A stretch of DNA of 64,000 nucleotides from Macrostomum lignano (Eukaryota). Positions 5,700 through 62,735 of the stretch are shown one piece after another; positions within the stretch are counted from its first letter, which is position 1, and each line of letters begins with the position of its first letter. Position numbers and translations under genes: made by a program. The stretch covers positions 369,313 through 433,312 of the forward strand of contig NIVC01000330.1 in the NCBI GenBank assembly GCA_002269645.1. Direction: 5' to 3'. The notes under the pieces are model-generated. The model was given only the letters and a program-made list of their open reading frames with translations. It did no database searches and was not told where the DNA came from.

Positions 5700-5769
5700 T
5701 GTGGCTGCAGCTCAAGCTGAGCAGTGAGACGCACACAAGGCGGGCGCAGCCACGGGCAGGTGAACTCAC

Positions 5770-13079: not shown

Positions 13080-13414
13080 CTGCGGAATAGCAATGGTAGT
13101 AGGCTGTGGATATAAGTACATTTTGGCTAGTTCATTCATAGCCCCGTTTTAATAAGGACTTGCAAATCAGCCACTGCCTCCAGTTGCAGTTGGAGTTTTG
13201 TAATTCTAATTAGCAATTTTGTTAGCATTGGCACTAATTTGCCTACCGAATAACACGTTGGTTCAGTAACGGAAATAACCGTTTTCAGTAAAGTTGGGAA
13301 GCACGAAAAAGTGCAAATATCAGAGAACTAAATAAACAGATATGTTGGCAATACGTTTCTTTCAAGTGCGTAAAGACTTTGTACTTGGACAAAAGCACTT
13401 TACAGTTGTCATTG

Positions 13415-33283: not shown

Positions 33284-33590
33284 ATAATAATAATTAATAA
33301 TAATTGATTGCACTTGCCCTAATGAGCAGATGTGCAACCGACAGCTCAGCCGCAGCTATTGCGCGGCGCATCTGAAGGCTGCGTACGGCTGTTCAGTCCA
33401 AGGACTGGGGGGTCGCCACACACCCCAATTACCTCGGCTAATGCTGGCACCAATTTAAAACTGGGTAAACTGAAGCAATGCAGAGTGAAGTGTCTAGCTC
33501 AAGGACACAAATTGTTCCAAGTGGGTCGAGAATCGAACCCCCGACCTTTCAGTCGTGAGTCTGACGCTCTAACGACTAGACTACAATCCT
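33284..33590 (-). mobile_element. tRNA-derived SINE copy
   Basis: Minus strand reads tgtagtctagtcgttagagcg (A box) ... ggttcgattc (B box) ... gtgtccttgagctagacac, ending in an (ATT)n tail; matches four other copies in the window. Confidence 0.85.
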
Positions 33591-40150: not shown

Positions 40151-40448
40151 GGATGCCGATATATTAGGCTAGATTGCTGGCTTTCAAGGCGGATGCTGTC
40201 TAATAAAGAAATGAACAATAGAGACAGCAAAAAATGTCAAAGATCATCAAAGCTTGAATGCAGTTCATTCTGAAAAATGTATCTTCCTTTGTATTTGTAG
40301 CCTCCCCAAACTGGCTGCGCAGATTTCTAGTAAATACTAACAGTAGGTGCGATTGCCTATCATAATTTGTTCTTCTGAGAAAATTAGGAACTTTGTGTGT
40401 GTGCCCGCCTTTAGTTTTAACTAAACCTAGAAAATTCCAGAAGTTGAT

Positions 40449-40685
40449 AACAATAATAATAATTGATAATAATTAATTACACCTGCCCTAATAGGCAGAT
40501 GTGCAACCAACAGCTCAGCCAGAGCTATTGCGCGGCGCATCTGGCACCCATTTTACAACTGGGCGAACTGAAGCAATGCAGAGTTAAGTGTCTTATTCAA
40601 GGACACACATCGCTCCAATGGTATTGGGAATCAAACCCCCGACCTTCAAGTCGCGAGTCCGACGCTCTAACCCCTAGGCTACAGC
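40449..40685 (-). mobile_element. tRNA-derived SINE copy (internally deleted)
   Basis: Same family as 33284-33590. Confidence 0.8.
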
Positions 40686-41008: not shown

Positions 41009-41600
41009 CACCCTCCAGAGTCCAACAATGGGCCGCCGCTACCCTCCAGAGTCCAACAATGGGCCGCCGCTACCCTCCAGAGTCCAACAATGGGCCGCCG
41101 CTACCCTTCAGAGTCCTACAATGGGCCGCCGCTACCCTCCAGAGTCCTACAATGGGCCGCCGCTACCCTCCAGAGTCCTACAATGGGCCGCCGCTACCCT
41201 TCAGAGTCCTACAATGGGCCGCCGCTACCCTTCAGAGTCCAACAATGGGCCGCCGCTACCCTCCAGAGTCCTACAATGGGCCACCGCTACCCTCCAGAGT
41301 CCTACAATGGGCCACCGCTACCCTCCAGAGTCCTACAATGGGCCGCCGCTACCCTCCAGAGTCCTACAATGGGCCGCCGCTACCCTTCAGAGTCCAACAA
41401 TGGGCCGCCGCTACCCTCCAGAGTCCAACAATGGGCCGCCGCTACCCTCCAGAGTCCAACAATGGGCCGCCGCTACCCTTCAGAGTCCTACAATGGGCCG
41501 CCGCTACCCTTCAGAGTCCTACAATGGGCCGCCGCTACCCTTCAGAGTCCAACAATGGGCCGCCGCTACCCTCCAGAGTCCAACAATGGGCCGTTGCTAC
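41009..41600. repeat. 31-bp minisatellite, about 19 copies
   Basis: Unit acaatgggccgccgctaccctccagagtcc(a/t). Confidence 0.95.
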
Positions 41601-42043
41601 CGCAAGAACGAGAATTGCCCAGACTAATTGCCTGCCGAGATTTGCCCGCAATGCTTTTTCCTGCAGCAAGTCTATTAATCAAGAGATTTACCCGATCATA
41701 ACGTTTCGATAGTAACTGCATATCAAATTCTTATTTTCCTTGTAGGCTTTCATTTCTATATGCATACAGGGGTACATCTATGAGCGATTCATTCATGCAC
41801 ATGCCATGTCGCTTTTGTCCCCTAAATCTCTTTATTAAAAGTTACTAAATTTTTCACTGTAACTTTTACTATAAAATGCGCTGCAGAAAAAATCATTGCG
41901 GGCAAACCTCGGCGGGCAAATCGTCTGCAGGAAATTCTCATGGACCCCGTCGCTACCCAACAAGTCCTACTATCTAAAATGGGATGCCGCTAGCCTAAAT
42001 CCCACAGCGGACAGGCACTACACCTCCGAGTCTATCAACGCAC

Positions 42044-42516: not shown

Positions 42517-43211
42517 CTGAGTAGCAGTTTGAGTTTGAGCACATTTGAGCAGTGTGACAGCACCATTGAAATAACTGAGCGGGACTGTATGGGCAGTAAA
42601 CCCATCTCTAGACTAAAACTTTCGATTCAAGAAAACTCAACTACGGAGATTGGAACTTTTCACTTTTTTCATAGTAAAATTGCTATTGCTTTCAATAGGA
42701 GACAGACCCAAAGTTTATCTTTTGATATGTTGTGCCTTTCTTGTAGCTCTATTGATATTTATAAAGCTTTTCGTTCAGAAAATTAGAATTCTTTGTTAGT
42801 TTTTTATTCTACATAAAATTGCATGTCTTCTTGTGCCTAAAAACCATTAAAATGGCACGGCTCATTGGTTTTATGAATCATTCTTAGCTGACTGTGTAAC
42901 AATATGTGTAACAGAGATGATAAAAAAGACTCAAAAAATTCCTAATTTTCTGAACGAAAAGCTTTATGAATATTAACAGAGCTATAAGAAAGGCACAACA
43001 TATCAAAAGATGAACACTGGGTTTAGGAGGATAGGAGGCAGCGCAGCGATAGGAGGCAGCGCAAGCAATAACGATTTTATTATGAAAAAAGTGAAAAAAG
43101 TTGCCATCTCCGTAGTGTATTTTCCAGAAAAATCCTGCCTCCTTAACTTTTTCTAAGAAACGTTTAGTTCGAACTCTAAACAGTGCCAGACAAAGCCGCC
43201 AATAAGCCAAC

Positions 43212-43488
43212 CTGATAGCGAGTCCGGCCGCTGCCAACAAAGTTCAGCTTGCAGCCGAGCCGGCCGCCCTGCTCGGCCAGGAACGCCTTGGCCCGCTGCT
43301 CGCAGTCTGTCAGGCCGGACACGGCCTCGTCGTATTCGCCGAGCACGCCGCGCTCCGGTATGATGACGCCTTCGCGTTTGGCTCGCTCGTTGTCGAATGA
43401 GCCGCGCAGGCCGCGAACAGTTGGCAGCAGGCTGGGGAACCGGCCGCCAGATTCTGTCGGGTTGATCAGCTGGCGCAGCAGCTCCGAA
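43212..43488 (-). CDS. MSH6: MSH6 exon 8
   Basis: GGRFPSL...SFDNERAKREGVIIPERGVLGEYD...GRTRYQ; 277 bp, phase 2 to 0. Confidence 0.9.
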
Positions 43489-43789
43489 CTGGGGTGGGTA
43501 GCCGGTCAGGGGTTGCAGAGGTTGCGCTGGGGAATTCCTGCTGATTTCCCGCGGGAATCCCCTTTTTGGTTATCTATCGGGGAATCCCCCTAACTCTGGG
43601 TTTCAGATTGAAGAAATTCATTCCGAGTTATTTTTATTGGGAATTTCCCCTCGGGTAATTTCTTCTGGAGATTTCCCCTCGGGTAATTTCTATTAAGAAT
43701 TTTCCCTCGGGTAATTTCTATTGGGGATTTCCCTTCCGGTTATTTTTATTGGGGATTTCCCTTCGGGTTATTTTTATTGGGGCATTCTC

Positions 43790-44178
43790 CTCAGGTAATT
43801 TCCGTTGGGGATTTCCCCTTGGGTAATTTCCATTGGGGATTCTCCATCGGATTTTTATTATGGATTTCCCCTCGGGTAATTTCTACTTGGGAATTCCCCT
43901 CAGGTTATTTCTATTGGGGCATTCCCGTTGGTTTATTTCTATTGGGGAATTCCCCGGTTTCCCAGGTGCTTGCATTAGGAGGCATTGCCTTCGGGTTTTC
44001 TAGATAGATAGGGTCTTTTCATAGTGAGTGGTTAAGCTACTGAAACACTGGAGACGATCGACCCAAGCGAGGCTTCAAAGACTCACTCGAACAGTTTCCT
44101 TTCAGCCAGGCCAGCCATCAGCCGGCAGGCGGCTTCAAAGCCGGCCAACAGTCCCAGGAAGTCTTCAATCTTGCGCTT
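43790..44178 (-). repeat. 389-bp direct duplicate of 52055-52443 (3' 92 nt of MSH6 exon 7 plus its GT donor and intron start)
   Basis: Appears identical by eye from ctcaggtaatttccg to caatcttgcgctt. Confidence 0.93.
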
Positions 44179-45012
44179 GTGATGATGGGGCTCAAGGGCT
44201 CGGTCCTTTCGTGCCCCTTTCCCAGACTCGGGTTCGTGTACTGACCCTGGCTACGGTCCTCCACTGACACGCGTACGACGCGGTGTCCGTCGGGACTAGG
44301 CTGTTCGAGCGTACGACGCACGACAGCCTACAGACTTGCGTACGACGCAGAGCTGCTTGGGGTGGGACCGGCGTACGACGCAGTTAATCCCTCTAAGGTG
44401 CCTAGTACAGATGCAGACCCAAATGACGTGCAAATTGGAAGGCTTACCAGCCGCGATTTCAGTCGTACAAGAAACAGCGCCGTCAGAGCAGTGGTGATCT
44501 CGATATTCTTTACTTATATATTTGTCTAGCAATTCGGCGAGGAATAGCAATTCCGCAACCAACGCTGGCACAATCGCCGAGGAGCCACGAAGACAACGAG
44601 AATGGGGTCTCACGGGGCTCTGAATAAATAGGCAGCAAACTGGGGGTTGAGGGCGCGGGATAAAGGCAGAAAAGGGGGCTTAGACATCAGCCAAGGCAAC
44701 GCATGAGCTGTACCAGCCAATCGCCGGGGCGCAGCACGGCAGACTGGGACTGGCAGCCAATCACAAACAGGGGCGGGGCAGCAAAGCTAACAAAATAATG
44801 GGCGGGGTCGCACAGGGGGGGGGGTCGCACGCAGAGCATGGGGGGTTGACTCAACAGAAAAGGTCTAGGCAGGGAGGGGAGGGGTACGCACGCGCAGAAG
44901 TGCAGGTGGGTGAGTCAGAAAATATCTAAGGAGGGGGGAGGGGGAGAGGACGGCCCACTGGCCCGGTGCAGCAACTTAGCAAAGAGCACACTGTCATAAC
45001 ACATTCATGACA
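44178..45012 (-). repeat. 3' LTR (835 bp) with promoter-like U3
   Basis: TG/CA termini; GC boxes and CCAAT boxes at about 44715-44810; TATATAAGTAAA on the minus strand near 44510-44521; short cgtacgacg repeats at 44270-44380. Confidence 0.85.
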
Positions 45013-45586
45013 CTCCCTCCCCCTAGACAAAAGTTCGAGTTCGAAAAGTCGAATATTGAAATGATGCTACTATAACAAAAAAAATTGAACAGAGGAACAA
45101 ACCGCATTTGAAAAATATTTTGGACTCGCATGGCAACTAGTTCGAACAAAAAACAAAACCGCAGTGATTATACCGTTTAAAAATGACGAAGAAACCTTCA
45201 ACATAGGATAGTGAGTACGCATCATTGGGAAGCAAAACGCAAATTTTGGGAAAAACTCACTTTAACAAAAACGCTGAAGTTCGAAAAAAACGCTAAATGT
45301 TAACAAAAAAAAAAAAAATGAAACCGTCAAACATTTACTCTCACAAGTAATACTAGCACTGCTTCCCTGCATCCCGCCGAGTACGGCCGTCGCTCTGGTG
45401 CCTCGTCTCCCTGTCGCTACTGTCGCCGGTTGCTCTGGTCGCTCTGCGCTGGTCGTCGAGTCCTGCGGTTGCTGCACAGCCGTGTCGCTCCGTCAGCACC
45501 CGTTAAGGCCGGTCCACCTCCGCTCCGCTGTCCCTGGGTCTGCACTGCAAAGTCCCTAGCCCCAAAGTCCCTAGGAAGACATAGCC

Positions 45587-46573
45587 TCAGTCAGAGCACG
45601 AATCCCACAGCCTACGGAGGGCACCCAGGACCAAACCCTGGCGTCGCAGGTCGAACAGCGGGAACACCACCATCACCGACATGTAGACAGCTTGACACGC
45701 TTGGCGACTCCACCGACGAACTCCGTGCCCCGGATACTTGCGACCGTCTCGCTCCAAGTAGCCCAGGATCTGCAGCATCAACTCCGGACCGAATTCCTTG
45801 AAATCCACCAAGGCAGTGGCGCACTTCCCCTTCAGGGCTAGCAGCACCTCAAAGATGCCCCACGAGTCGCCCTTCCGCATTGCCTGATGCAGTTTCTTCC
45901 GACTGGGTCCTACGTTCTCGAGTTCCGCGACGGTCACTGGTCGGCACGGTCTTGTCTGAAGCCGGTACGCTCTCTGCAGGTATTCTTCAATCAGGTTTCT
46001 ACATCCGGCACAATCTTCCTCCGCTTCCCATGACGTCTCAAGCTCCTCTACACCGGCCCACTGCAGCAGATACTCCGCTCCTCGCTCCGTGACTCGTACT
46101 CCTAAGACCTTCTCGACCTCGTACTCCTCCGGCAGTGTCTCACTCGCCTCGTTCATCTCTTCGTCCTGCTCATCGTCTGAGGCCTCCTCACTTGCCTCCA
46201 TCTTGACGTGCTCCTCATCCCTCCTCGCCTGTTCTCTCTCGTACGCCTCCTCAGCTAATCGGTCGCTCTCTTGTAGTCTTTCTATCTCTTCTCGGAGATC
46301 GTCGGGCATGTCGTCATCCTCTAACATTCCTTCTGCGAGCCGAAGCATCTCATCCCGGTCACGAACAGCATTTCCAAAGATATCGTACAGCTTTCTAAGG
46401 AACGGACACGACAGTATTCGGTACGCCTCTTCGCACTCCTGGAATCTCTTCCGCGTCTCCTCTGTTGCGCTCTTGTCTGGGTGCAGTTCGCGTGCTCGAC
46501 CGTAGAACGCTTTCCGAATCTGTGCCGCAGACGCCCACAGCTGCACTCCAAGACACTCGTAGAGGTCCGCCAT
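45587..46573 (-). CDS. Retrotransposon accessory ORF3: N-terminal DnaJ (J) domain, acidic linker, chromodomain, unknown C-terminal region (328 aa)
   Basis: DLYECLGV...ASAAQIRKAF...LHPDK...FQECEEAYRILSCP.LRKLYD matches the J-domain pattern with HPD; YEVEKVL...EYLLQWAG...TSWEAEEDC..C..LIEEY matches the chromodomain pattern. Confidence 0.9.
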   Translation of the reverse strand: MADLYECLGVQLWASAAQIRKAFYGRARELHPDKSATEETRKRFQECEEAYRILSCPFLRKLYDIFGNAVRDRDEMLRLAEGMLEDDDMPDDLREEIERLQESDRLAEEAYEREQARRDEEHVKMEASEEASDDEQDEEMNEASETLPEEYEVEKVLGVRVTERGAEYLLQWAGVEELETSWEAEEDCAGCRNLIEEYLQRAYRLQTRPCRPVTVAELENVGPSRKKLHQAMRKGDSWGIFEVLLALKGKCATALVDFKEFGPELMLQILGYLERDGRKYPGHGVRRWSRQACQAVYMSVMVVFPLFDLRRQGLVLGALRRLWDSCSD

Positions 46574-46672
46574 CTGTAACAGTCCGGCCTAACTCCGATG
46601 AGCAATGAGACACGCACGACATGAACCTCCCTTCCCCCTTGGCTATCCAAGCGCCGTACACCGGACCCTTCT

Positions 46673-49600
46673 TCAGTAGTGGTACACCGGGACCCCAAAC
46701 CGATCTGGCGGTCGCCGCAGACGTCTTGGTCGCCCTGCTTCCTCCTGTGCCGTCCTCACTTCCTGCTCGGGTACGTTGGCGTCGTTCGGCTCTGCCTCAT
46801 CCTCTTCGTTTTGCTCCTCGTCGTACCGCGCCTCATCAAAGTGCTCTTCTTCGTCATCGTCTGCTTCTGGACGCTCAGGTCCGGGCTCACGGTCTCCGGC
46901 CAGATTTCGGGTGTCCGGCGGAGCGTGATCTCTTGGATCTTGAAACCGCAGCTGAAGATCTTCAAACTCTTCATCTTCCTGCTCGGATTCCGGGTCCTGC
47001 GGCCCTCGCGCTGCGGTCCACCTCTGGGTCTCGCCCCGTTGCACTCTCTGCCTTCGGCTTCGTCCAGCAGCGGAGTTACCGCGTCGCGGTCTGGTTTTTC
47101 TCGAACTGGCCCTCCCAATTTCCTCTCTTGTCTCTTGACCGTCTGCCGCCTCCGTCTGAACCTGAACCGGCCGGAGATTGTTGAAGTGCACCACCTTGGT
47201 CTTCTGCGGCTGTGTCGGATCCTGCACTCGGTACAACGCATCTGACAGCTTCTCCAGGACCTTCACTGGGCCGCGCCAGTTGATATGGAACTTGCTCTTC
47301 TCTCCCATCTCCAAGCACGGATAGTACAGCAAGACAGAGTCGCCCTTCTGAATCGCTTTGCCCTTCACTTTCCGATCGTAATTCATTTTCTGCCGTCGCT
47401 GAACCGTCTCGCGTCCTTCTCGAATGCGTTCATGGGCATGAAGCAGGTTCTGCTGGATCTCTTGCACAAACAAGGGATAGCTGTCCGTCTTTCGCCTAAG
47501 GTCCTCTGGTTCGAATCCCAGCGGCATCTCCTGACCATGCAGCATGTAGTAGGGCGTGTAACCGGTGGACGCCTGGACCGTCGATCGATAAGCCATCAAG
47601 GCACTTGGCAGGTACTCCTCCCAGGCGTTCTGACCCTTCTGTACCAGATACGTGCGCAAACTGTTCTTCAGGAACCCGTTAAATCGTTCCACCTGTCCGT
47701 TGCCACTCGGGTGGTAGGCGCTCGTCCTGGTCTTCTTCACACCCAACAGCTCGCACAGCTTCCTGACGATCCCCGACTCAAAGTTCCTTCCTTGGTCTGA
47801 GTGAAGTACCCGGGGGCACCCGTGATTGGCAATCCAGCGTTCGAATAGCACCCTTGCGATCGTTGCCGCCTTCTGGTTCCGGATGGCATAAGCGTCAGGC
47901 CACTTTGAGAACGCATCTTGCACCGTGAGGATGTAGAAGTTTCCTTTCTTGCTCCGTGGCAGCGGCCCGATGACGTCTGTCATCACGATATCGAATGGGC
48001 TTGAACTCGGAATCGGCTCCATCGGTGCAATTGGTTTCTTGCCAGCCTTGGCCTTGGTGCAGTCCAAACAGGCTTTTACGTGCTCTTCGACCTCGCGGCC
48101 AAGTCCCGGCCTCCAAAACGATTGCCGCACCTTCTCCTTGGTCTTGAAAATCCCAACGTGCCCTCCACTCCGTCCACCATGAGCTTCTTCCAGCACCGCT
48201 CTCAGCATATTCCGTGGCAACACCACTTGCGGCTGACGTCCACTGGCCGTATGACACAGCAACACCTCACTGTCCGACACCTCAAGGTCACGACGTCTTT
48301 CGACAATCCTCCTTGCCGTCGGTGATATGCGTCGCAAATGCTCTTCGGTTATCTCTCCGTCGCCGTGTGCCAGCAGCTCCATCGCCTGACGAATGTCGCT
48401 GTCCATCTTCTGGCTCTCTCTGATCTCCTCCGAGGTCCACCTCTGCAATCCCAACGCGTTCACACCGATCTGCTCTTGTGCACATCCAGGACAACTCTCG
48501 CTTCCTTGATGGCGCCGACGTGGCTTCCTGGATAGAGCGTCCGCGTGTTGATGTTTCACTCCCGGACGATGTTCGATGCGATACCTGTACGGAGCCAAGA
48601 GTTCCAGCCATCTGGCCAGTTGTCCTTCTACGTCCCGCAGCGAATGCAGCCACTTCAAGCTGCTGTGATCGGTGCGCACTAGAAACTCTCGCCCCATCAG
48701 GTAATAACGAAACTTCTGTACGAAAAACACCACGGCCAGCAACTCGACTCGTGTCGTGCAGTAATTCCGTTCTTCTCGCGACAACGTCCTGCTTCCGTAA
48801 GCTATTACCTTCTCACTCCCATCTTTCTGCACCTGCGAAAGCACAGCGCCAATTCCTTCTTTTGTGCTACCGTCTGTGTCTAAAACGAATTCTCCAGCGT
48901 CCTCCGCAAAGTTTGGAAACGCCATGACCTCAGATCCCTGCAACCTTTCCTTCAGGGCCTCGAATGCGGCTTGACACTCCTTATCCCAGCTCCACGGGCA
49001 ATCATTTCGGGTCCGTCGCAGCATCGGCTCAGCAATGCGGGAAAAATCTGCGATGAATTGCCGGTAATACCCGCACAGTCCCAGGAATGACCTTACTTCC
49101 TTCACATTCCTCGGAGTTGGCCAGTCACGAATTTCGGCAATCTTTTCTGGACTCGTGGCGATCCCATCAGCTGACACTACGTGTCCCAGGAAGGTCACTG
49201 ACTTCAGCAGGAATGCGCACTTCTTCGGCTTCAGTTTGATGTTCGCTGCTCGCAACCGTCGAAAAACCGTTTGCAACCGTTCCAGGTGCTCTTCCACCGT
49301 TCGTGACCACACTAGCAGGTCGTCCAGATACACCAAACACGTCTTCCAGCACAACTTCCCCAACACCACATTCATTAGCCGGCTGAATGAAGCCGGTGCA
49401 TTTGTCAATCCAAATGGCATAACGTTCCAGGCGTACTGCTGTACCCGGTGTGAAACGCCAAAGGCCGTCTTTAGTCTGTCGCTGGGTTCCACCGCCATCT
49501 GCCAGTATCCCGACTGCATGTCCATGGTCGAAAAAATCTTGGCACCGCCTAGGCTCTCCAACAGGTCATCTGTCCTGGGCAACGGCACTGCATCCTTCTT

Positions 49601-50881
49601 GGTCACTTCATTCAGTTTCCGGTAGTCACAACAGAACCTCAGGGAACCGTCCTTCTTTTTCACGCACACCACCGGAGAGCACCATGGGGACTGGACCTCG
49701 CTGATTCTCCCAGCTTCCAGCAAGTCATCCAACTCCTCGTCCACTTCCTGCCGCAGGTACGGGGGAATCCGCCTCGCCGCTTCTTTCACAGGCCTGGCAT
49801 CTCCAGTGTCGATCTCGTGCTTCATCACCGTCGTACAGCCGAGATCCTTGGAGTCCTTAGCAAAGACAGCCCGATGTTGGGAAATCAGCTCCCTGAAGTC
49901 GGCTTCCTCCTCCTCCGACAGGCCACACGAACCCCACTCGCGGAATTCTTCGATCGGGTCCCATGCCTCCGCTTCATTCTTGGCCTCTACGTCGTCGTCC
50001 AAGCGCACCACGTTGATACCTCCGTTCGGTTCCAAAGGAATAAACCAGCCAATCGTCTCTCCTTTCTTGACCCTCTTCCTACAACTGGACGTATTCAGCA
50101 ATCTCATCGGCAGCCGTCCATCCACGCCGGGCGCTACCAGAGCTCGAGCCAGCGCCAAATCCTTCTCAGAGGCCTTCACTGACTTTTCTTCCGTTATGCC
50201 GACAGATCCGCAGTTTCTTGCGCCCTTTTTCTCTACCCTGGCTGGCATGATCACTTCTTGCGCCGGTTCCAGGAATACCGTTGTCTCGGCTTTGATTCGA
50301 CACACCACGGGCAGCTCGCCTTTCTGCCGTATCGGAACTCTAACATCGCCCACTCGAAAGACAAACTCTGAATAGTTGATGACGCAACGATGCTGTTTGA
50401 AAAATTCGGACCCGAGAATGACGTCATAGCGCAATCCGTCCACTACAAAGAAATTCGCTGACCACCGCTCGCCGCCAATCTCCACGTCCAGCACAATACA
50501 GCCTCTCATCCTCATCGCACCTCCATTGGCCGTTGAAAGGGCCCCGTCCATCATCGTCAGTCTCTCTCTCACTTCTTGCGGCAGCCTCAGGAAAACATCA
50601 CAGCTCAGCACTGACACACTCGCACCACTGTCTAACAGCAGAGCCACTGGCTTGCCGGAAACCGCACCGGAAATAAAAACTGTCAAGGGCTCCGTTGATA
50701 CCGACGAACCCCCCTCTTGAACCAGGTTGCTCTTTAAATTCCCATCACCAGAGACGCACTTGGATTTATTTACAGAGTTAGTGCCCAACCCCGGTTCCTC
50801 GCTCCTGGGAGACTTCACTTCCTGGCAGGGTCCCGACTCTCCCCGGTCGGTCCCCTCGGCCCGTTTCCCGACTTCGGACAC
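46673..50881 (-). CDS. Gypsy pol (protease-RT-RNase H-integrase), uninterrupted 1402 codons, probably made by -1 frameshift from gag
   Basis: LLDSGA; YLDD; DTDGS...GIGAVL; H-H-C-C zinc finger; TDVIGP...SDQG...GQVERFN; GPV(Y/F)-like C-terminal region and acidic tail; no ATG at the start of the frame. Confidence 0.96.
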   Translation of the reverse strand: MSEVGKRAEGTDRGESGPCQEVKSPRSEEPGLGTNSVNKSKCVSGDGNLKSNLVQEGGSSVSTEPLTVFISGAVSGKPVALLLDSGASVSVLSCDVFLRLPQEVRERLTMMDGALSTANGGAMRMRGCIVLDVEIGGERWSANFFVVDGLRYDVILGSEFFKQHRCVINYSEFVFRVGDVRVPIRQKGELPVVCRIKAETTVFLEPAQEVIMPARVEKKGARNCGSVGITEEKSVKASEKDLALARALVAPGVDGRLPMRLLNTSSCRKRVKKGETIGWFIPLEPNGGINVVRLDDDVEAKNEAEAWDPIEEFREWGSCGLSEEEEADFRELISQHRAVFAKDSKDLGCTTVMKHEIDTGDARPVKEAARRIPPYLRQEVDEELDDLLEAGRISEVQSPWCSPVVCVKKKDGSLRFCCDYRKLNEVTKKDAVPLPRTDDLLESLGGAKIFSTMDMQSGYWQMAVEPSDRLKTAFGVSHRVQQYAWNVMPFGLTNAPASFSRLMNVVLGKLCWKTCLVYLDDLLVWSRTVEEHLERLQTVFRRLRAANIKLKPKKCAFLLKSVTFLGHVVSADGIATSPEKIAEIRDWPTPRNVKEVRSFLGLCGYYRQFIADFSRIAEPMLRRTRNDCPWSWDKECQAAFEALKERLQGSEVMAFPNFAEDAGEFVLDTDGSTKEGIGAVLSQVQKDGSEKVIAYGSRTLSREERNYCTTRVELLAVVFFVQKFRYYLMGREFLVRTDHSSLKWLHSLRDVEGQLARWLELLAPYRYRIEHRPGVKHQHADALSRKPRRRHQGSESCPGCAQEQIGVNALGLQRWTSEEIRESQKMDSDIRQAMELLAHGDGEITEEHLRRISPTARRIVERRRDLEVSDSEVLLCHTASGRQPQVVLPRNMLRAVLEEAHGGRSGGHVGIFKTKEKVRQSFWRPGLGREVEEHVKACLDCTKAKAGKKPIAPMEPIPSSSPFDIVMTDVIGPLPRSKKGNFYILTVQDAFSKWPDAYAIRNQKAATIARVLFERWIANHGCPRVLHSDQGRNFESGIVRKLCELLGVKKTRTSAYHPSGNGQVERFNGFLKNSLRTYLVQKGQNAWEEYLPSALMAYRSTVQASTGYTPYYMLHGQEMPLGFEPEDLRRKTDSYPLFVQEIQQNLLHAHERIREGRETVQRRQKMNYDRKVKGKAIQKGDSVLLYYPCLEMGEKSKFHINWRGPVKVLEKLSDALYRVQDPTQPQKTKVVHFNNLRPVQVQTEAADGQETREEIGRASSRKTRPRRGNSAAGRSRRQRVQRGETQRWTAARGPQDPESEQEDEEFEDLQLRFQDPRDHAPPDTRNLAGDREPGPERPEADDDEEEHFDEARYDEEQNEEDEAEPNDANVPEQEVRTAQEEAGRPRRLRRPPDRFGVPVYHY

Positions 50882-51939
50882 TTGAAGGATAGGTGGCCTT
50901 CACCGTTGCACTTGTGACATCGTACTGGCGATTTCCCGTTTTCACTCTTCTGACTGGTCTTCTTCGGACACTTTGATGAGATATGGCCCCACTCTCGACA
51001 TGAAAAACACTGCACAGCCTTCCGACTCGCCGGGGTCGGCTCTGCCGCTTCTTCAGACCTCCGCTCCTCCATCTCTTTCATTCGCATCTCCATGGCCGCC
51101 AGCTGTTTTCGAAGCATCTCGACCTCACTGCTTTCGGAAGCCTCCTTTCGGGTTTCGGTCGTGACAGCGCAAACGGCTCTTTTCGATACCTGACCTGGTG
51201 GACCATGACTTGCCCTAACCGCCGCTTCCAGCTGATGCACCAGACGCATTGCGTCCGCTAACGTATCCGGCTGGCTCATGTACAGTCGCTCACGCACAGC
51301 CACCCCCGCACGGACGCCTCGCATAAATCGCTCTTTCGCAAGATCATCGCGCACATCGGCAGGCGCATCAGGAAAGGCGTTTGCGACCAACTCAATCACA
51401 GCTTCAGAGAAATCTTCTACCGACTCCTTCTCGCTCTGCTCTCTATTGCTCAGTTCTGTGCGGTAGTCGACGACGGTACGGTGCATAGTGAACCTATCCC
51501 TCAAGGCCTGGGTAAATTCTTCGAACTGCAGGTCGTCATCAAGGTTCATGTTGTCAACAACTTGGAAGGTGCTGAAGTCTAGGTTGCTGAGCAACTGAGC
51601 GCGCCGATTCTGCATCGGAATCTGCATGGCATCGCAATAAGCTACGAAGAGCCTCAACCACTTCACGAAATTCATTCCTGGAGCATACTTCACCGGCCTC
51701 TGAATCCTGAGGGCACCCGCTTGCTGCATGTTCTGCTGAATCTGGGCAGTCAAGGCGGCGACCAGATCATTAACACCAAAGGCTCCAGCAGCACCTCCAG
51801 CCGCACCTTCAGCCGCACCTCCAGCCGCACCTCCAGCAGCACCTCCAGCCGCACCTCCAGCCGCACCTCCGGCAGCACCTCCAGCAGCACCTCCAGCCGC
51901 ACCTCCAGCCGCACCTCCAGCAGCACCTCCAGCATCCAT
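50815..51939 (-). CDS. Gypsy gag (374 aa) with two CCHC knuckles and an N-terminal (GAAG) repeat
   Basis: CFSCREWGHISSKC and CHKCNGEGHLSFKC; capsid-like core REQSEKESVEDFS; ATG about 90 nt downstream of the PBS. Confidence 0.92.
   Translation of the reverse strand: MDAGGAAGGAAGGAAGGAAGGAAGGAAGGAAGGAAGGAAGGAAEGAAGGAAGAFGVNDLVAALTAQIQQNMQQAGALRIQRPVKYAPGMNFVKWLRLFVAYCDAMQIPMQNRRAQLLSNLDFSTFQVVDNMNLDDDLQFEEFTQALRDRFTMHRTVVDYRTELSNREQSEKESVEDFSEAVIELVANAFPDAPADVRDDLAKERFMRGVRAGVAVRERLYMSQPDTLADAMRLVHQLEAAVRASHGPPGQVSKRAVCAVTTETRKEASESSEVEMLRKQLAAMEMRMKEMEERRSEEAAEPTPASRKAVQCFSCREWGHISSKCPKKTSQKSENGKSPVRCHKCNGEGHLSFKCPKSGNGPRGPTGESRDPARK
50863..50869 (-). promoter_or_regulatory. -1 ribosomal frameshift slippery heptamer G GGA AAC with a downstream GC-rich hairpin
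   Basis: X XXY YYZ in the gag frame inside the gag/pol overlap; pol is in the -1 frame; downstream CCGAC...GTCGG stem. Confidence 0.75.
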
Positions 51940-52351
51940 ACCACGGCGTCACAGTTTCTAACCTTAATTTCTCACAATATTCCGCGCCTCGAGCTTTCTT
52001 CCTTACTTAGTCTTCCACAGCGCAGGGTCCCACCAAGGATGCCAATGGTAATTTCTCAGGTAATTTCCGTTGGGGATTTCCCCTTGGGTAATTTCCATTG
52101 GGGATTCTCCATCGGATTTTTATTATGGATTTCCCCTCGGGTAATTTCTACTTGGGAATTCCCCTCAGGTTATTTCTATTGGGGCATTCCCGTTGGTTTA
52201 TTTCTATTGGGGAATTCCCCGGTTTCCCAGGTGCTTGCATTAGGAGGCATTGCCTTCGGGTTTTCTAGATAGATAGGGTCTTTTCATAGTGAGTGGTTAA
52301 GCTACTGAAACACTGGAGACGATCGACCCAAGCGAGGCTTCAAAGACTCAC

Positions 52352-53319
52352 TCGAACAGTTTCCTTTCAGCCAGGCCAGCCATCAGCCGGCAGGCGGCTT
52401 CAAAGCCGGCCAACAGTCCCAGGAAGTCTTCAATCTTGCGCTTATTGTATTGCACAGCTTCGAACAGCACAGCCCGCTGATCCGGATGGTCCGTGCCGGC
52501 AGGCCGGCAGCCGAACACGTGCATCTTAGCCGTCAGCTTCTCTAAATCTGGCAGCTTCTTCAGGCCGGCTGATAATTCCTGGCAGACTTGTCGATCGGCC
52601 GACACCAGTTCAGCGACGGCCTCCTGGCGGCGTTGGATCGCTTCCGGATGGCAGAGCGGAGCGCACAGCCACTGCTGCAGCAGCCGCTTGCCGAAGGCCG
52701 TGCCGCAGCGGTCCAGCCGGCTGTACAGGGTGGCCTCAGATGACCCGCCGCCTCCTCTCTGCTGCTCAGCGAAGACATCCAGATTGGCCAGCGCGATGCC
52801 GTCAAGCACAGCGTGAGTCTGGCTGGCGTAGAATGGCGGCGCATCAGCTGCTTTCATCTCGGCCTCATCAGCGCCAGCCTCATCGGCAGCTGAGCCGGAG
52901 TCTGCCGGCCTGTAGACGGCGAAGTTGCGCATAGACAGCACGTCGTGATCGATGAGGCAGCGGCTCAGGTAGTGCACCAGGCCGCCAAGGGCGCTCACTC
53001 CGAGCTCCCACTGTCTGGCCGCGGTCCGGCCAAGGCTGTCCGACTCGCATAGCAACGGTTGCAGACCCTCGGGCCAGGCGAACTTGCCGTTATCAACAAA
53101 GTAAGGCGCCTCGGCCAGGTGTGCCAGGCACCGGCCGCTGTCCCAGAACTCGCGGCCGGGCGTCAGCGCCTCTTTCGGCACGGCGCGGAGGCAGCCGTTC
53201 AGGATGGCCAGAGTGGCCGGGCGGAGTCGGCCGCGCTCGTGCAGCAGCTGGGCAGGCGGATGGTGCGCTATGAGGGTGCGCAGCCGGGAGCAGTGGCAGT
53301 CGTCGGCGAACTGTCCCAC
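52352..53319 (-). CDS. MSH6: MSH6 exon 7 (connector and core domains)
   Basis: VGQFADDCHCSRLRTL...LDGIALANL...TAFGKRLLQQWLCAPL...LPDLEKL; gcgcag acceptor, GTGAGT donor, phase 0 to 2. Confidence 0.95.
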
Positions 53320-53451
53320 CTGCGCCAATGGGGTTGGCAAAATTTAGTTTGTACTTTGTTAGTGCAATTCCAGTGCGTTCCTTGACGTCCTTGAAGCACG
53401 ATTTGAAGTAGGATCCCAAAAACAGTTTTTGTCTGCCACTAACAAACTAGG

Positions 53452-53762
53452 GGTTGTAGCCCAGTGCTTAGAGCGTTTTACTCACGAGTAACGACTTGAA
53501 GGTCCGGGGTTCGATTCGCGATCCTACTGGAACAATTTGTGTCCTTGAGCAAGACACTTAACTCTGCATTGCTTCAGTTCACCCAGTTGTAAAATGGGTG
53601 CCAGCATTAGCTGGGGTAATTGAGGGTGTGTGTGTGTGTGTGTGTGGCGACCCCCCAGTCCTTGGACTGAACAGTCGTACGCAGCCTTCAGATGCGGCGC
53701 GCAATAGCTGCGGCTGAGCTGTCGGTTGCACATCTGACCATTGTGGCAATTATTATTATCTG
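53452..53762 (+). mobile_element. tRNA-derived SINE copy (full length)
   Basis: A box tagcccagtgcttag, B box ggttcgattc, gtgtccttgagcaagacacttaac core, internal (GT)n, attattatt tail. Confidence 0.87.
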
Positions 53763-54373: not shown

Positions 54374-54419
54374 CTGGCAGAGCGATTAGAAAGTTTTAAC
54401 CATCGTTATAATAAACTCC

Positions 54420-55590
54420 AGTGCCTGAGTTGAGAACCCTACTCCCCATTGCCTGAGTTGAGAACCCTACTCCCCATTTCCTGAGTTGAGTACCCTACTC
54501 CCCATTGCCTAAGTTGAGAACCCTACTCCCCATTTCCTGAGTTGAGAACCCTACTCCCCATTTCCTGAGTTGAGTACCCTACTCCCCATTGCCTGAGTTG
54601 AGAACCCTACTCCCCAGTGCCTGAGTTGAGAACCCTACTCCCCAGTGCCTAAGTTGAGAACCCTACTCCCCATTGCAGTTGAGAACTCTACTCTCCAGTG
54701 CCTAAGTTGAGAACCCTACTCCCCATTGCCTGAGTTGAGAACCCTACTCCCCATTGCCTGAGTTGAGAACCCTACTCCCCAGTGCCTGAGTTGAGAACCC
54801 TACTCCCCATTGCCTGAGTTGAGAACCCTACTCCCCAGTGCCTGAGTTGAGTACCCTACTCCCCAGTGCCTGAGTTGAGAACCCTACTCCCCATTGCCTG
54901 AGTTGAGAACCCTACTCCCCATTGCCTGAGTTGAGAACCCTACTCCCCAGTGCCTGAGTTGAGTACCCTACTCCCCAGTGCCTGAGTTGAGAACCCTACT
55001 CCCCATTGCCTGAGTTGAGAACCCTACTCCCCAGTGCCTGAGTTGAGTACCCTACTCCCCAGTGCCTGAGTTGAGAACCCTACTCCCCATTGCCTGAGTT
55101 GAGAACCCTACTCCCATTGCCTGAGTTGAGAACCCTACTCCCCAGTGCCTGAGTTGAGTACCCTACTCCCCAGTGCCTGAGTTGAGAACCCTACTCCCCA
55201 TTGCCTGAGTTGAGAACCCTACTCCCCAGTGCCTGAGTTGAGAACCCTACTCCCCAGTGCCTGAGTTGAGAACCCTACTCCCCATTGCCTGAGTTGAGAA
55301 CCCTACTCCCCAGTGCCTGAGTTGAGAACCCTACTCCCCAGTGCCTGAGTTGAGTACCCTACTCCCCAGTGCCTAAGTTGAGAACCCTACTCCCCATTGC
55401 AGTTGAGAACTCTACTCCCCAGTGCCTAAGTTGAGAACCCTACTCCCCATTGCAGTTGAGAACTCTACTCTCCAGTGCCTGAGTTGAGTACTCTACTCCC
55501 CATTGCCTGAGTTGAGAACCCTACTCCCCAGTGCCAAAGTTGAATTCCCAACTACAGTGCCTGAGTTGCATACCCTCCTCCCCCAGTGTC
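54420..55590. repeat. 28-bp minisatellite, about 41 copies
   Basis: Unit cctgagttgagaaccctactcccca(t/g)tg. Confidence 0.95.
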
Positions 55591-55636
55591 TGAGTCGTCT
55601 GCCTCAGGCCATCTACGCAAACCATAAAAAAATTAC

Positions 55637-55933: not shown

Positions 55934-56099
55934 CTGTGGGTAATAGATGAAAATTTGTGAAATATAAATGATGATTGACTATAAACAGCTTTTATAGTTA
56001 ATTTAGCTGTATATATACTACTTACTACAAATATTAAATCCAAGAAATTAAATACTGTATTGAGGGTTTTAATTATAAATTAATATTTAATTGATTACA

Positions 56100-56375
56100 C
56101 CCACCCCAATTAGGCCAGATGTGCAACCGACAGCTCAGCCGCAGCCATTGCGCGGCGCATCTGAAGGCTGCGTACGGCTGTTCAGTCCAAGGACTGGGGG
56201 GTCGCCACACACCCTCAGTTACCCCAGTTAATGCTGGCACCCATTTTACAGCTGGGTGAGCTGAAGCAATGCAGAGTGAAGTGTCTTGCTCAAGGACACA
56301 GATTGTTCTAAGTGGGCCGAGAATCGAACCCCCGACCTTTTAGTCGTGAGTCCGACGCTCTAACCAGCAGGCAAC
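56100..56375 (-). mobile_element. tRNA-derived SINE copy
   Basis: Same family as 33284-33590. Confidence 0.85.
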
Positions 56376-56614
56376 AAGCCTTTTAACCCCTTTAGGGACT
56401 TAAGATACTTCAAGAATCGTTTAACTGTCAATAAAGTGTTTCTGTAGATTCTACGACAATTTATGAGCCTGCTTTTGCTGGCCATCGAAGGAAGAAAGTC
56501 CCATTTTTAAGGTAAAGAAAGAAAAATTATTTAGTTTTTAAATCATACAAGTTCTACTCCTAGCCAGAAGCTCCTGGCCCAGAAGGCCCAGGAGGCCCTG
56601 GCCTCCTATCTAGA

Positions 56615-56975
56615 AGCTCTACTACCCTGAAGCTCTACTACCCTGAAGCTCTACTACCCTGAAGCTCTACTGCCCTGAAGCTCTACTACCCTGAAGCTCT
56701 ACTACCCTGAAGCTTTACTGCCCTGAAGCTCTACTACCCTGAAGCTCTACTACCCTGAAGCTCTACTACCCTGAAGCTCTACTACCCTGAAGCTCTACTA
56801 CCCTGAAGCTCTACTACCCTGAAGCTCTACTACCCTGAAGCTCTACTACCCTGAAGCTCTACTACCCTGAAGCTCTACTACCCTGAAGCTCTACTACCCT
56901 GAAGCTCTACTACCCTGAAGCTCTACTACCCTGAAGCTCTACTACCCTGAAGCTCTACTACCCTGAAGCTCTACA
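56615..56975. repeat. 16-bp minisatellite, about 22 copies
   Basis: Unit gaagctctactaccct. Confidence 0.95.
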
Positions 56976-57559: not shown

Positions 57560-58029
57560 CTGGAGAGTAGTCTGTAATGTAGCAGTAGTAAGCGCATTGA
57601 ATTAATTGACAAATAGCAACATTTAGGATTATTTCTAGAAAATATCACTTTAGCTACTTTTCAAATGTAGCAATACATTTTAAGCAGACCCGCTAAATTA
57701 GACTGTCTTAGACTCGGAATTATCTATCAGTATCAAAAGAGACAGTTTCTGTAGTAAAACTAGGAAAAATCGTGTACAAAAGCCGAGGTTGCCAGGAAAA
57801 TGTGCGGCAAGAAAGGTACCAGCTCAGGACAGAATTTCAGCAGCTGTCTAATTTTACTATTAAAATCAATTAATGAGCTTAAGTATACTAATACACTTAT
57901 TTATTCGGTTAGGCTGCATAAAGATTTGTATTTAAAAAACTTTTACCAACTGACTAGCAATCAGCGCCCCCCGTTTGATTTTTTTAATAAACTACATGTA
58001 GCTTCTCTTTGCAATAACCTCAGCAATCC

Positions 58030-58145
58030 GTCTGTCTGTCTGTCTGTCTGTCTGTCTTTCTGTCTTTCTTGTCTGTCTGTGTGTCTTAGTGTCTGTCTGT
58101 CTGTCTGTCTGTCTGTGTGTCTTAGTGTCTGTCTGTCTGTCTGTC

Positions 58146-58218
<73 letters not shown>

Positions 58219-58247
58219 GTGTCTGTCTGTGTGTCTGTCTGTCTGTC

Positions 58248-58312
<65 letters not shown>

Positions 58313-58313
58313 G

Positions 58314-58372
<59 letters not shown>

Positions 58373-58389
58373 GTGTCTTAGTGTCTTAG

Positions 58390-58420
<31 letters not shown>

Positions 58421-58441
58421 TTGTCTGTCTGTCTGTCTGTG

Positions 58442-58492
<51 letters not shown>

Positions 58493-58525
58493 GTGTCTTA
58501 GTGTCTGTCTTTGTGTCTGTCTTAG

Positions 58526-58566
<41 letters not shown>

Positions 58567-58569
58567 TAG

Positions 58570-58640
<71 letters not shown>
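58030..58640. repeat. (TCTG)n microsatellite, about 600 bp
   Basis: Directly visible; the SVCL ORFs are artefacts. Confidence 0.97.
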
Positions 58641-61619: not shown

Positions 61620-62735
61620 GCAACGGCTGAAATTTCAGAATCTTCCCTAATTCCCATTGAGAATCTTCCAATTACCATTCGAGAGTTTTCTTAAATTCTT
61701 CTTTAATAATCTTCCCTATAAGTACCCTTTGTGAATCTTCCCTAATTTTTTAAAACAATATTTCCCTATTCCTCTTTAAGAATCTTCCAAAATTTCCCTG
61801 AAAATCTTCCCTAATTCCCCATTTGAGAATCTTCCCCAATTCCCCATTTGAGAAGCTTTACCTTTTCCCCTTTGAGAATCTTCCCCAATTCCCCATTTGA
61901 GAATCTTCCCGATTCCCCTTTTGAGAATCTTCCCGATTCGCCTTTTGAGAATCTTCCCTAATTCGAGAAGCTTCACCTTTTCCTATTTGAGAATCTTCCC
62001 TAACTTCCCCTTGAGAATCTTCCCAATTCCTCTTTGAGAAGCTTCACATTTTCCCCTTTGAGAATCTTCCCCGATTCCCCATTTGAGAATCTTCCCGATT
62101 CCCCCTTTTGAGAATCTTCCCGATTTCCCCTTTTGAGAATCTTTCCCAAATTCCCATTTGAGAAGCTTCACCTTTTTTTCTCATTTGAGAATCTTCCCTA
62201 TCTTCCCCTTGAGAATCTTCCCAATTCCCCTTTGAGAATCTTCCCAATTTTCATTTGAGAATCTTCCCCAATTCCCCATATGAGAAGCTTCCCAAATTCC
62301 CCCTTTGAGAATCTTCCCCAAATTCCCCTTTTAAGAATCTTCCCCAATTCCCCTTTTGAGAATCTTTCCCAAATTCCCCTTTTAAGAATCTTCCCCAATT
62401 CCCCTTTTAAGAATCTTCCCCAAATTCCCCTTTTAAGAATCTTCCCCAATTCCCCTTTTGAGAATCTTTCCCAAATTCCCCATTTGAGAAGCTTCACCTT
62501 TTCCCATTTGAGAATCTTTCCAATTCTCATTTGAGAATTTTCCCGATTCCCTTTTGAGAAGCTTCACCCTTTCCCATTTGAGAATCTTTTCAAGTCCCTT
62601 TTGAGAATCTTCCCAATTTCCATTTGAGAATCTTTCCCAATTCCCTATTTGAGAATGTTTAGCTTTTCCCATTTGAGATTTCCCTAATTTTCCTTTTGGG
62701 AATCTTCCCAATTCCCCCATTTGAGAATATTTCGC
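61620..62735. repeat. Diverged minisatellite with a unit of about 24-26 bp
   Basis: Unit about gagaatcttccccaattcccc(a/t)ttt; ORFs here are artefacts. Confidence 0.9.

What the first reader, a model, noticed from the sequence alone, without database searches (positions are those of the whole stretch)
43790..52443. 5' LTR missing; a 389-bp duplication of host MSH6 sequence flanks the element instead
Seen: the layout is host B (43790-44178), LTR, internal region, PBS (to 52044), 10 nt of filler (atggtaattt, echoing the nearby ggtaatttc), then host B again (52055-52443) and the rest of exon 7. The LTR abuts the exact point inside the exon 7 copy where the duplication ends. Normal Gypsy TSDs are 4-6 bp. 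Inference: the element first integrated into MSH6 exon 7, and a microhomology-mediated template switch or recombination with an uninserted allele then removed the 5' LTR and rebuilt an intact exon. That would rescue an essential repair gene. The alternative is a haplotype-merging assembly artefact.
Basis: partly seen in the sequence, partly recalled or inferred. Interest (0 to 1): 0.7.

Follow-up and report, generated by a model that had tools for sequence, protein, structure and literature searches.

The report
One-LTR retrotransposon flanked by 389-bp duplication
A young Gypsy retrotransposon in a flatworm MSH6 mismatch-repair gene lacks its first LTR and sits between two identical 389-bp host copies, which looks like a botched one-ended insertion that left the hit exon intact, though an assembly error is not excluded.

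Summary
Window 43790-44178 and 52055-52443 are 389/389 identical. Between them lies a minus-strand Ty3/Gypsy element with open gag, pol and ORF3 and one complete 835-nt LTR.

Comparison with seven full-length copies from Macrostomum lignano shows that only the 5' LTR plus 1 nt is missing. The element starts at AT plus the PBS (window 52046). The true filler is 8 nt (GGTAATTT), copied from the intron minisatellite. Normal copies have 4-bp TSDs.

The window's + strand from 44178 to 52046 equals a full-length minus-strand cDNA, from the U5 terminus to the PBS. Its 3' end runs into the patch and then into host DNA.

Best reading (about 0.6): a single-step aberrant integration. The U5 end was joined normally. 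The PBS end was extended by a host polymerase 389 bp away, which created the duplication. This matches one-ended integrations described for ASLV and HIV-1 in cell culture.

The duplication spans the exon-intron boundary, so the exon hit became an intronic insertion.

No reads or independent assembly of the locus could be reached, so an assembly artefact (about 0.15) is unlikely on structural grounds but not excluded.

The parts
43790..44178 (-). Duplicate copy 1 (B1). It holds the first 297 nt of the intron (43790-44086) plus a 92-nt exon fragment (44087-44178) with its GTGAGT donor. It abuts the LTR end.
   Evidence: 389/389 identical to 52055-52443. Exon/intron split taken from the donor GA|GTGAGT.
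44178..45012 (-). Complete 3' LTR, 835 nt, TGTCATG...CATCACA. Base 44178 is shared with the host sequence.
   Evidence: Aligns end to end to both LTRs of L001-L004, L006 and L007 and to the one LTR held for L005, at 95.7-99.6% identity.
45013..45024 (-). Polypurine tract AGGGGGAGGGAG, directly upstream of the LTR.
   Evidence: Sequence read. The same tract precedes the 3' LTR in the reference copies.
45587..46573 (-). ORF3, 328 aa, with a DnaJ (J) domain and a chromodomain.
   Evidence: Pfam DnaJ 4.7e-16 and Chromo 1.4e-12. The same ORF is called in L003.
46673..50881 (-). pol ORF, 1402 aa, in the order PR-RT-RNaseH-IN. It is open.
   Evidence: Pfam hits. 97-99.3% identical to M. lignano proteins.
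50815..51939 (-). gag ORF, 374 aa, with a CCHC zinc knuckle and an N-terminal (AGGA)n stretch from a 12-nt tandem repeat at 51783-51933.
52026..52044 (-). Primer binding site TGGCATCCTTGGTGGGACC.
   Evidence: Identical in all seven reference copies, where it follows LTR plus AAT.
52045..52046 (-). AT, the last 2 nt of the 3-nt spacer AAT. This is the outermost element-derived sequence.
   Evidence: Alignments of every reference copy to the window start at 52046. Junction view.
52047..52054 (+). 8-nt filler GGTAATTT, a templated patch from the intron minisatellite. With the next 2 nt (CT) it equals the 10-mer GGTAATTTCT.
   Evidence: This 8-mer occurs 11 times on the + strand: 10 of them in the two minisatellite copies and this patch, and one at 35365. 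About 1.2 are expected by chance. The 10-mer GGTAATTTCT is also at 43654, 43682, 43710 and 43875.
52055..52443 (-). Duplicate copy 2 (B2): 297 nt of intron (52055-52351) plus the last 92 nt of the intact exon (52352-52443).
52352..53340 (-). It encodes MutS domains II-III and ends at the donor GA|GTGAGT.
   Evidence: Pfam MutS_III 3e-25. 38-42% identical to MutS II-III proteins.
43212..43488 (-). Next exon (277 nt), in frame with the exon above. The ancestral intron was 598 nt and is now 8863 nt.
   Evidence: Acceptor and donor read. The spliced translation extends the MutS_III hit to residue 327.
43630..43955 (.). 28-nt intronic minisatellite. The left boundary of the duplication (43789/43790) falls inside it.
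   Evidence: TRF: period 28, 11.8 copies.

Best explanation
This is a real, recent, single-step aberrant ('one-ended') integration of a Ty3/Gypsy cDNA that never acquired a 5' LTR.

Shown:
- The window's + strand from 44178 to 52046 is colinear with a full-length minus-strand cDNA read 5'->3'. It runs from the U5 terminus of the single LTR, through the internal region, to the PBS plus 2 nt.
- That strand continues without a break into an 8-nt patch copied from the intron minisatellite. It then continues, with a 2-nt CT overlap, into host sequence that starts 389 bp downstream (in gene sense) of the point where the U5 end is joined.

Inferred:
1. Reverse transcription completed the minus strand but plus-strand transfer failed. 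One possible cause is that the PBS tail of the plus-strand strong-stop DNA was cut off at the CA. A 1-LTR circle opened in the AAT spacer would give the same molecule.
2. Integrase joined the only competent end (U5 ...CACA) to the sense strand inside the MSH6 exon.
3. The free 3' end of the minus strand was used as a primer by a host polymerase on nearby host DNA. It first made a short abortive copy in the minisatellite, then a stable extension through the intron and exon.
4. Fill-in and homologous joining completed the insertion. The polarity is that of a normal target-site duplication, but over 389 bp instead of 4 bp.

Because the duplicated block spans the exon-intron boundary, an intact exon with its donor lies upstream of the element. 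The element now sits in an enlarged intron.
For: Family and normal structure:
- The duplication is exact, 389/389.
- All seven full-length M. lignano copies read LTR(...CATCACA)-AAT-TGGCATCCTTGGTGGGACC.
- Three independent insertions have 4-bp TSDs: CTTA, AATG and ACAG.

This copy:
- It has a full 835-nt LTR, and its alignments to every reference copy begin exactly at 52046. Only the 5' LTR plus 1 nt is missing.
- The U5 end is joined at the canonical CA: CATCACA|AGCGC.
- The filler 8-mer is specific to the local minisatellite.
- The copy is young: it differs from L004 by 0-3 positions per 400 nt over most of its length, and all ORFs are open.

Host gene:
- The exon, its donor and the next exon are intact and in frame. 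Further MSH6 exons follow downstream.

Precedent (PMC5041404): in aberrant ASLV and HIV-1 proviruses one end is normal and the other is often truncated. Host DNA is most commonly duplicated over hundreds to thousands of bp. The authors explain this by priming from the unintegrated viral 3' end on nearby host DNA, sometimes with several appended patches, followed by homologous recombination. Capture of Ty1 replication intermediates into chromosomes is documented in yeast (PMC11372161).
Against: - No reads, no second assembly of this locus and no empty allele could be obtained. The junction at 52046/52047 therefore rests on one assembly of a neopolyploid genome that its users describe as error-prone (PMC10733133).
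- The U5 junction has a 1-2 nt ambiguity (host AAGCGC against cDNA CACAAAT). Joining by integrase cannot be told apart from microhomology end joining.
- There is no microhomology between the cDNA 3' end (..CCAAT) and the sequence preceding any GGTAATTT unit.
- This is a single case. None of the seven other loci fetched (at least five independent insertions) lacks a 5' LTR.
- The failure of plus-strand transfer is inferred from end positions only.
Confidence: 0.6

Rival explanations
1. Two-step history. A canonical two-LTR insertion with a 4-bp TSD disrupted the exon. Later a break at or near the 5' LTR/PBS border was repaired. The PBS-side 3' end invaded an uninserted allele or homeolog in the minisatellite, copied the intron and exon, and re-annealed beyond the resected LTR.
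For: It gives the same final structure and the same templated patch at 52047-52054. M. lignano is a neopolyploid, so uninserted templates would exist. Selection on a mismatch-repair gene could favour such a repair.
Against: It needs a chromosomal break within 1-2 nt of the LTR/spacer boundary, with no known cause. It also needs loss of exactly the LTR side. The boundary is instead a natural cDNA end. It requires two rare events where one suffices. The two 389-bp copies show no allelic differences.
Confidence: 0.12
2. Assembly artefact. The true locus is heterozygous or homeologous for a normal two-LTR insertion. A piece ending at the inner edge of the repeated LTR was joined to a piece of the empty haplotype that starts in the minisatellite. 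That would create a false duplication.
For: The genome is a neopolyploid whose draft assembly contains wrongly expanded or collapsed variants. The two copies are 100% identical. The left and right host junctions would be correct in such a merge. Only the junction at 52046/52047 would be false, and nothing independent confirms it.
Against: - There are no Ns or gaps.
- The two sides of the junction share no sequence that could mislead an overlap assembler.
- Confusion between LTRs gives solo LTRs or tandem elements, not precise loss of an LTR.
- A chimeric read would not be expected to land 1 nt from the LTR edge, in the right orientation, 389 bp from the same element's own insertion site.
- The 8-nt patch plus a 2-nt overlap looks like biological end joining.
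- None of the seven other loci fetched, all from the Mlig_3_7 assembly, shows this defect. That assembly may not be the window's own source.
Confidence: 0.15
3. Integrase-independent capture. A free one-LTR cDNA (or an opened 1-LTR circle) was patched into a gapped or broken replication intermediate by host end joining at both ends.
For: Both ends of the insert lie within 1-2 nt of the ends of one specific cDNA species. The U5 junction allows a 2-nt AA microhomology. cDNA capture at breaks and integrase-independent insertion are known.
Against: Simple capture at a double-strand break gives no duplication, let alone one with the polarity of a TSD. There is no PBS or PPT homology at the target, as there is in the Tf1 pathway (sequence). 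The U5 end sits at the exact processed CA.
Confidence: 0.1

Closest known systems
Aberrant one-ended retroviral integrations (ASLV vectors with one defective LTR end; HIV-1 with suboptimal strand-transfer inhibitors or weakened integrase; Hughes laboratory, PMC5041404)
   Same: One normal LTR-host junction and a truncated other end. A direct host duplication of hundreds of bp replaces the short TSD. Short copied patches sit at the aberrant junction. The model of priming from the unintegrated viral 3' end on nearby host DNA fits base by base.
   Different: Here the event is natural and apparently germline, in a Ty3/Gypsy retrotransposon of a flatworm, not in a cell-culture infection. The bad end is not a mutated or drug-blocked LTR end but the PBS end of a cDNA with no 5' LTR at all. 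The duplication happens to span an exon-intron boundary.
Capture of Ty1 cDNA replication intermediates at chromosomal double-strand breaks in yeast (PMC11372161 and the work it cites)
   Same: Incomplete reverse-transcription products become chromosomal inserts through host repair.
   Different: Those inserts are mostly fragments joined by NHEJ at a break, without a long flanking duplication. Here the insert is full length apart from the missing LTR, one junction looks canonical, and there is a 389-bp duplication.
Integrase-independent Tf1 insertion by single-strand annealing (PMC11042837)
   Same: The single-stranded termini of the cDNA that derive from the reverse-transcription primers (PBS, PPT) decide where and how the cDNA is joined.
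   Different: That pathway needs target homology to PBS or PPT and mostly makes tandem elements at pre-existing copies. No such homology or pre-existing copy is present here.
5'-truncated LINE-1 insertions with microhomology at the 5' junction and variable TSDs
   Same: It works in a similar way: a first-strand cDNA 3' end is resolved on target DNA by microhomology or template jumping, and the TSD length is set by the distance between the two strand breaks (established knowledge).
   Different: The element is an LTR retrotransposon with PBS, PPT and integrase. It has no poly(A) junction and no target-primed reverse transcription.
False duplications in long-read assemblies of heterozygous or polyploid genomes
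   Same: Two 100%-identical copies of a short host block lie close together in an error-prone draft genome.
   Different: There is no gap or contig end between the copies. The copies flank a retroelement whose ends coincide with cDNA termini.

Membership tests
Ty3/Gypsy (Metaviridae) LTR retrotransposon | gag with a CCHC knuckle, and pol in the order PR-RT-RNaseH-IN | tested here: met
   Pfam hits in that order on the 374-aa and 1402-aa ORFs.
Ty3/Gypsy (Metaviridae) LTR retrotransposon | Two direct LTRs, TG...CA | tested here: not met
   This copy has one LTR only. The family itself has two 835-nt LTRs in L001-L004, L006 and L007; L005 is cut by its contig end.
Ty3/Gypsy (Metaviridae) LTR retrotransposon | PBS next to the 5' LTR and PPT next to the 3' LTR | tested here: met
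   PBS TGG... lies 3 nt after the LTR in all reference copies and is retained here. The PPT AGGGGGAGGGAG lies before the LTR. Complementarity to a specific tRNA was not tested; no tRNA gene was found in the window or the loci.
Ty3/Gypsy (Metaviridae) LTR retrotransposon | Short (4-6 bp) target-site duplication | tested here: not met
   The TSD is 4 bp in three reference insertions but 389 bp here.
One-ended (aberrant) integrase-initiated integration | One LTR end joined to host at the processed CA | tested here: inconclusive
   The junction reads CATCACA|AGCGC, so it sits at the CA. A 1-2 nt A/AA overlap with host AAGCGC also allows end joining.
One-ended (aberrant) integrase-initiated integration | Other end truncated or abnormal and joined through short copied patches or microhomology | tested here: met
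   The 5' LTR is absent. An 8-nt minisatellite-derived patch and a 2-nt CT overlap lie at 52047-52056.
One-ended (aberrant) integrase-initiated integration | Direct duplication (or deletion) of flanking host DNA of hundreds of bp or more, with TSD polarity | tested here: met
   A 389-bp direct duplication flanks the insert. The polarity follows from strand assignment: the + strand equals the minus-strand cDNA 5'->3'.
One-ended (aberrant) integrase-initiated integration | Dependence of the good end on integrase activity | not testable with these tools
   This needs experiments.
cDNA capture at a double-strand break by NHEJ | Insert at a break with no long flanking duplication | tested here: not met
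   A 389-bp duplication is present.
Solo LTR / LTR-LTR recombination product | A lone LTR without internal region, flanked by the original TSD | tested here: not met
   The full internal region of about 7 kb is present.
Assembly false duplication | Duplicated block adjoining a gap or contig join; no molecule spans it; depth not doubled | not testable with these tools
   The window has no Ns. Reads and depth are not available.

The most novel reading that the evidence does not exclude
The locus is a heritable fossil of a dead-end reverse-transcription product: a complete minus strand with no plus-strand transfer. It was integrated by one end only. The long duplication made by host repair is a general 'self-healing' route by which LTR-retroelement hits in exons of essential genes are turned into tolerated intronic insertions. 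Under this reading, a genome-wide search in this very active family would find more one-LTR, PBS-terminated copies with long TSDs.
Probability: 0.3. Interest if true: 0.65.

Novelty: new member of a known kind. Interest (0 to 1): 0.45.

Why it matters
If real, this would be a natural and apparently germline example of one-ended retroelement integration. In the work I read, that process is described from engineered ASLV and HIV-1 infections in cultured cells.

It also preserves, base for base, the ends of a reverse-transcription intermediate: U5-CA at one end and PBS plus 2 nt at the other. That gives a rare in vivo read-out of where minus-strand synthesis stops and of how host polymerases resolve such an end.

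It shows how a retrotransposon hit in an exon of a mismatch-repair gene can leave the coding sequence intact. This bears on which insertions survive selection in TE-rich genomes.

Practically, it flags a structure that TE annotators (which expect two LTRs and a short TSD) and gene predictors will both mis-handle. It also names a junction that should be checked in the M. lignano assembly.

Tried and rejected
- An independent copy of the locus. Protein searches with the hit exon and with the ATPase exons found only 38-54% identical MutS/Msh6 homologues and no M. lignano MSH6. Exact look-ups of this copy's ORF3 and gag found nothing on record. No empty site or second assembly could therefore be compared.
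- Other one-LTR copies. All seven loci fetched through pol proteins carry a 5' LTR, so the structure is not a family-wide or assembly-wide habit.
- A hairpin-prone or fragile minisatellite as the reason for the second junction. Folding 43700-43880 as DNA gave z = -0.54 against shuffles, which gives no support.
- PBS or PPT homology at the target, as in the Tf1 pathway. None was seen beyond 2 nt.
- Filler derived from the element itself. The 8-mer is absent from the element and specific to the minisatellite.
- A poly(A) signal in the LTR that might truncate MSH6 transcripts. There is no AATAAA or ATTAAA in the LTR.
- A tRNA matching the PBS. No tRNA genes occur in the window or the loci.
- Mosaic structure of this copy. 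It is closest to L004 almost throughout, with two or three 400-nt pieces closer to other copies. This is uninformative.
- Solo LTR, LINE-like TPRT and simple break capture were rejected on structure (see the membership tests).
- Literature. A search for natural one-LTR or long-TSD LTR-retrotransposon insertions found nothing relevant. Two papers from the Hughes laboratory (PMC1317513, PMC3767498) were not held.


Full report
**Observation**

The two host blocks 43790-44178 and 52055-52443 are identical at all 389 positions. Similarity ends abruptly on both sides. A self-comparison of the window shows many tandem minisatellites but no other 100%-identical dispersed repeat, and no second copy of the LTR. 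The window contains no Ns. The duplication is real in the sequence and cannot be chance.

**The element**

Between the blocks lies a minus-strand Ty3/Gypsy element:
- gag, 50815-51939, with a CCHC knuckle;
- pol, 46673-50881, in the order PR-RT-RNaseH-IN;
- a third ORF, 45587-46573, carrying a DnaJ domain and a chromodomain.

All three ORFs are open. The pol protein is 97-99.3% identical to several Macrostomum lignano proteins. The window therefore comes from that flatworm or a very close relative.

I fetched seven loci of the same family from the M. lignano assembly GCA_002269645.1 (L001-L007). I compared them with the window in pieces only.

Every copy reads LTR (835 nt, TGTCATG...CATCACA), then AAT, then TGGCATCCTTGGTGGGACC (the PBS). 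A polypurine tract GGGGAGGGAG precedes the 3' LTR. Three independent insertions have 4-bp target-site duplications: CTTA, AATG and ACAG. One insertion (L001/L006) has none. LTR pairs within L001-L003 are 99.3-99.9% identical. The window copy differs from L004 by only 0-3 positions per 400 nt over most of its length. The family is therefore very young.

**What is missing**

The window's LTR (45012->44178) aligns end to end with the reference LTRs. At the other end, every reference copy aligns to the window starting exactly at 52046. That position is the AT of the AAT spacer, followed by the PBS.

Only the 5' LTR and one spacer nucleotide are absent.

On the + strand that 8-mer occurs 11 times, against about 1.2 expected by chance. 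Ten of these are in the two copies of the local 28-nt minisatellite and in this patch itself; the eleventh is at 35365. With the next two bases the patch equals GGTAATTTCT, which is present in four minisatellite units. The patch is therefore templated from the intron, and it overlaps the start of the duplicated block by CT.

**The host gene**

The open frame 52348-53340 (minus strand) carries MutS domain III. Downstream exons at 42193-41981, 40957-40727, 33723-33631, 33227-32961 and 32549-32319 match the Msh6 ATPase domain at 38-84% identity, piece by piece. The best-named hits for these exons are Msh6.

The exon ends at 52352 with a consensus donor, GA|GTGAGT. The next exon is 43488-43212. 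Splicing the two is in frame and lengthens the MutS_III match.

The duplicated block is therefore 92 nt of exon plus the first 297 nt of an intron that was originally 598 nt long. In the present arrangement an intact exon with its donor lies upstream. The element (same orientation as the gene) and a 92-nt exon fragment now sit inside an 8863-nt intron.

**Mechanism**

The decisive point is strand polarity. The element's sense strand is the window's minus strand. The window's + strand from 44178 to 52046 is therefore the minus-strand cDNA written 5'->3'. Its 5' end is at the U5 terminus, where the tRNA primer was removed. Its 3' end is at the PBS plus 2 nt, where minus-strand synthesis stops on the RNase H-trimmed template before plus-strand transfer (established model of retroviral reverse transcription).

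That 3' end continues directly into the 8-nt minisatellite patch and then into the intron, the exon and beyond. This is what is expected if a host polymerase extended the unintegrated cDNA 3' end on nearby host DNA. At the other end the LTR is joined at its processed CA (CATCACA|AGCGC).

The two joining points have the polarity of a normal integration: the plus-strand 3' end joins the sense strand, and the minus-strand 3' end joins the antisense strand downstream. They lie 389 nt apart instead of 4 nt apart, and filling in gives the 389-bp duplication.

Steps shown by the sequence:
- the identity of both insert ends;
- the patch and its source;
- the polarity;
- the exactness of the duplication.

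Steps inferred:
- plus-strand transfer failed, or a 1-LTR circle was opened in the spacer;
- integrase made the U5 junction;
- a host polymerase and homologous joining completed the event.

**Precedent**

Varadarajan et al. 2016 (PMC5041404) summarise ASLV and HIV-1 experiments. When only one viral end can be inserted by integrase, the other end is often truncated. Host DNA is most commonly duplicated over hundreds to thousands of bp. The authors explain the structures by priming from the unintegrated viral 3' end on nearby host or viral DNA, sometimes appending several patches, followed by homologous recombination. A duplication or a deletion results, depending on the side.

The present locus fits this description point by point. 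Yeast work shows that Ty1 replication intermediates do enter chromosomes (PMC11372161). Tf1 can insert without integrase through its primer-derived single strands (PMC11042837).

**Rivals**

That amounts to about 3 acceptable positions in about 8.7 kb. It is possible but unparsimonious (0.12).
- *Assembly artefact.* I could not reach reads or another assembly of the locus, and the M. lignano draft is known to contain wrongly expanded variants. Against this, the junction shares no sequence that could mislead an overlap assembler. LTR confusion does not delete an LTR precisely. There is no gap. A chimeric read would not be expected to hit a cDNA terminus in the right orientation 389 bp from the same element's insertion point (0.15).
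- *Integrase-independent capture at both ends.* The 1-2 nt ambiguity at the U5 junction permits it, but it does not naturally give a TSD-polarity duplication (0.1).

**Verdict**

The order of events is better explained by one aberrant integration than by insertion followed by rescue.

The locus is a new, natural member of a known kind of event. It is of moderate interest, and its reality hinges on read-level confirmation.

One script did hold the retained 7.9-kb element region of the window as a single unprinted, unsaved string while scanning for poly(A) signals. That scan should have been done in pieces, as was done afterwards.

Noticed in passing
window 45587-46573 (-); L003 11363-12349: This Gypsy family carries a third ORF (328 aa) that combines a DnaJ/J domain with a chromodomain. 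A full-text search found no paper describing such an accessory ORF in LTR retrotransposons.
   Followed up: partly
window 51783-51933 (-): The N-terminus of gag is an (Ala-Gly-Gly-Ala)n stretch encoded by a 12-nt tandem repeat. Its copy number differs between genomic copies of the element.
   Followed up: no
L001 651-9339 and L006 646-9332: A full-length two-LTR copy (the same insertion on two contigs) has no target-site duplication; its flanks are ...ACAG and GTAT.... It may be a recombinant between two elements, or another aberrant insertion accompanied by a host deletion.
   Followed up: no
window about 8785-11156 (-): A second, much older Gypsy-like pol remnant, 27-33% identical to the young family at protein level.
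   Followed up: no
window 33285-33573, 40446-40683, 53491-53749 (-), 56070-56364: A dispersed repeat of about 290 bp (82-90% identity between copies), scattered in MSH6 introns. It looks like a SINE or MITE.
   Followed up: no
window 42657-43097: A nested inverted repeat in the next intron. Arms of 89 nt are 89% complementary and arms of 35 nt are 91% complementary. It looks like a hairpin or MITE.
   Followed up: no
whole window, e.g. 1066-1630, 4384-5711, 7301-8288, 13408-14477, 16765-17670, 41010-41601, 54415-55595, 56613-56974, 58027-58640, 61632-62733: The introns are packed with long minisatellite arrays, up to 1.3 kb. There is also an AT-rich block (GC 25-33%) at about 23-29 kb.
   Followed up: no
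window 44087-44178 (-): The 92-nt exon fragment with an intact GTGAGT donor lies directly downstream of the LTR's U5 end, in the same orientation. A transcript starting in the LTR could splice into the next MSH6 exon. This was not testable here.
   Followed up: no
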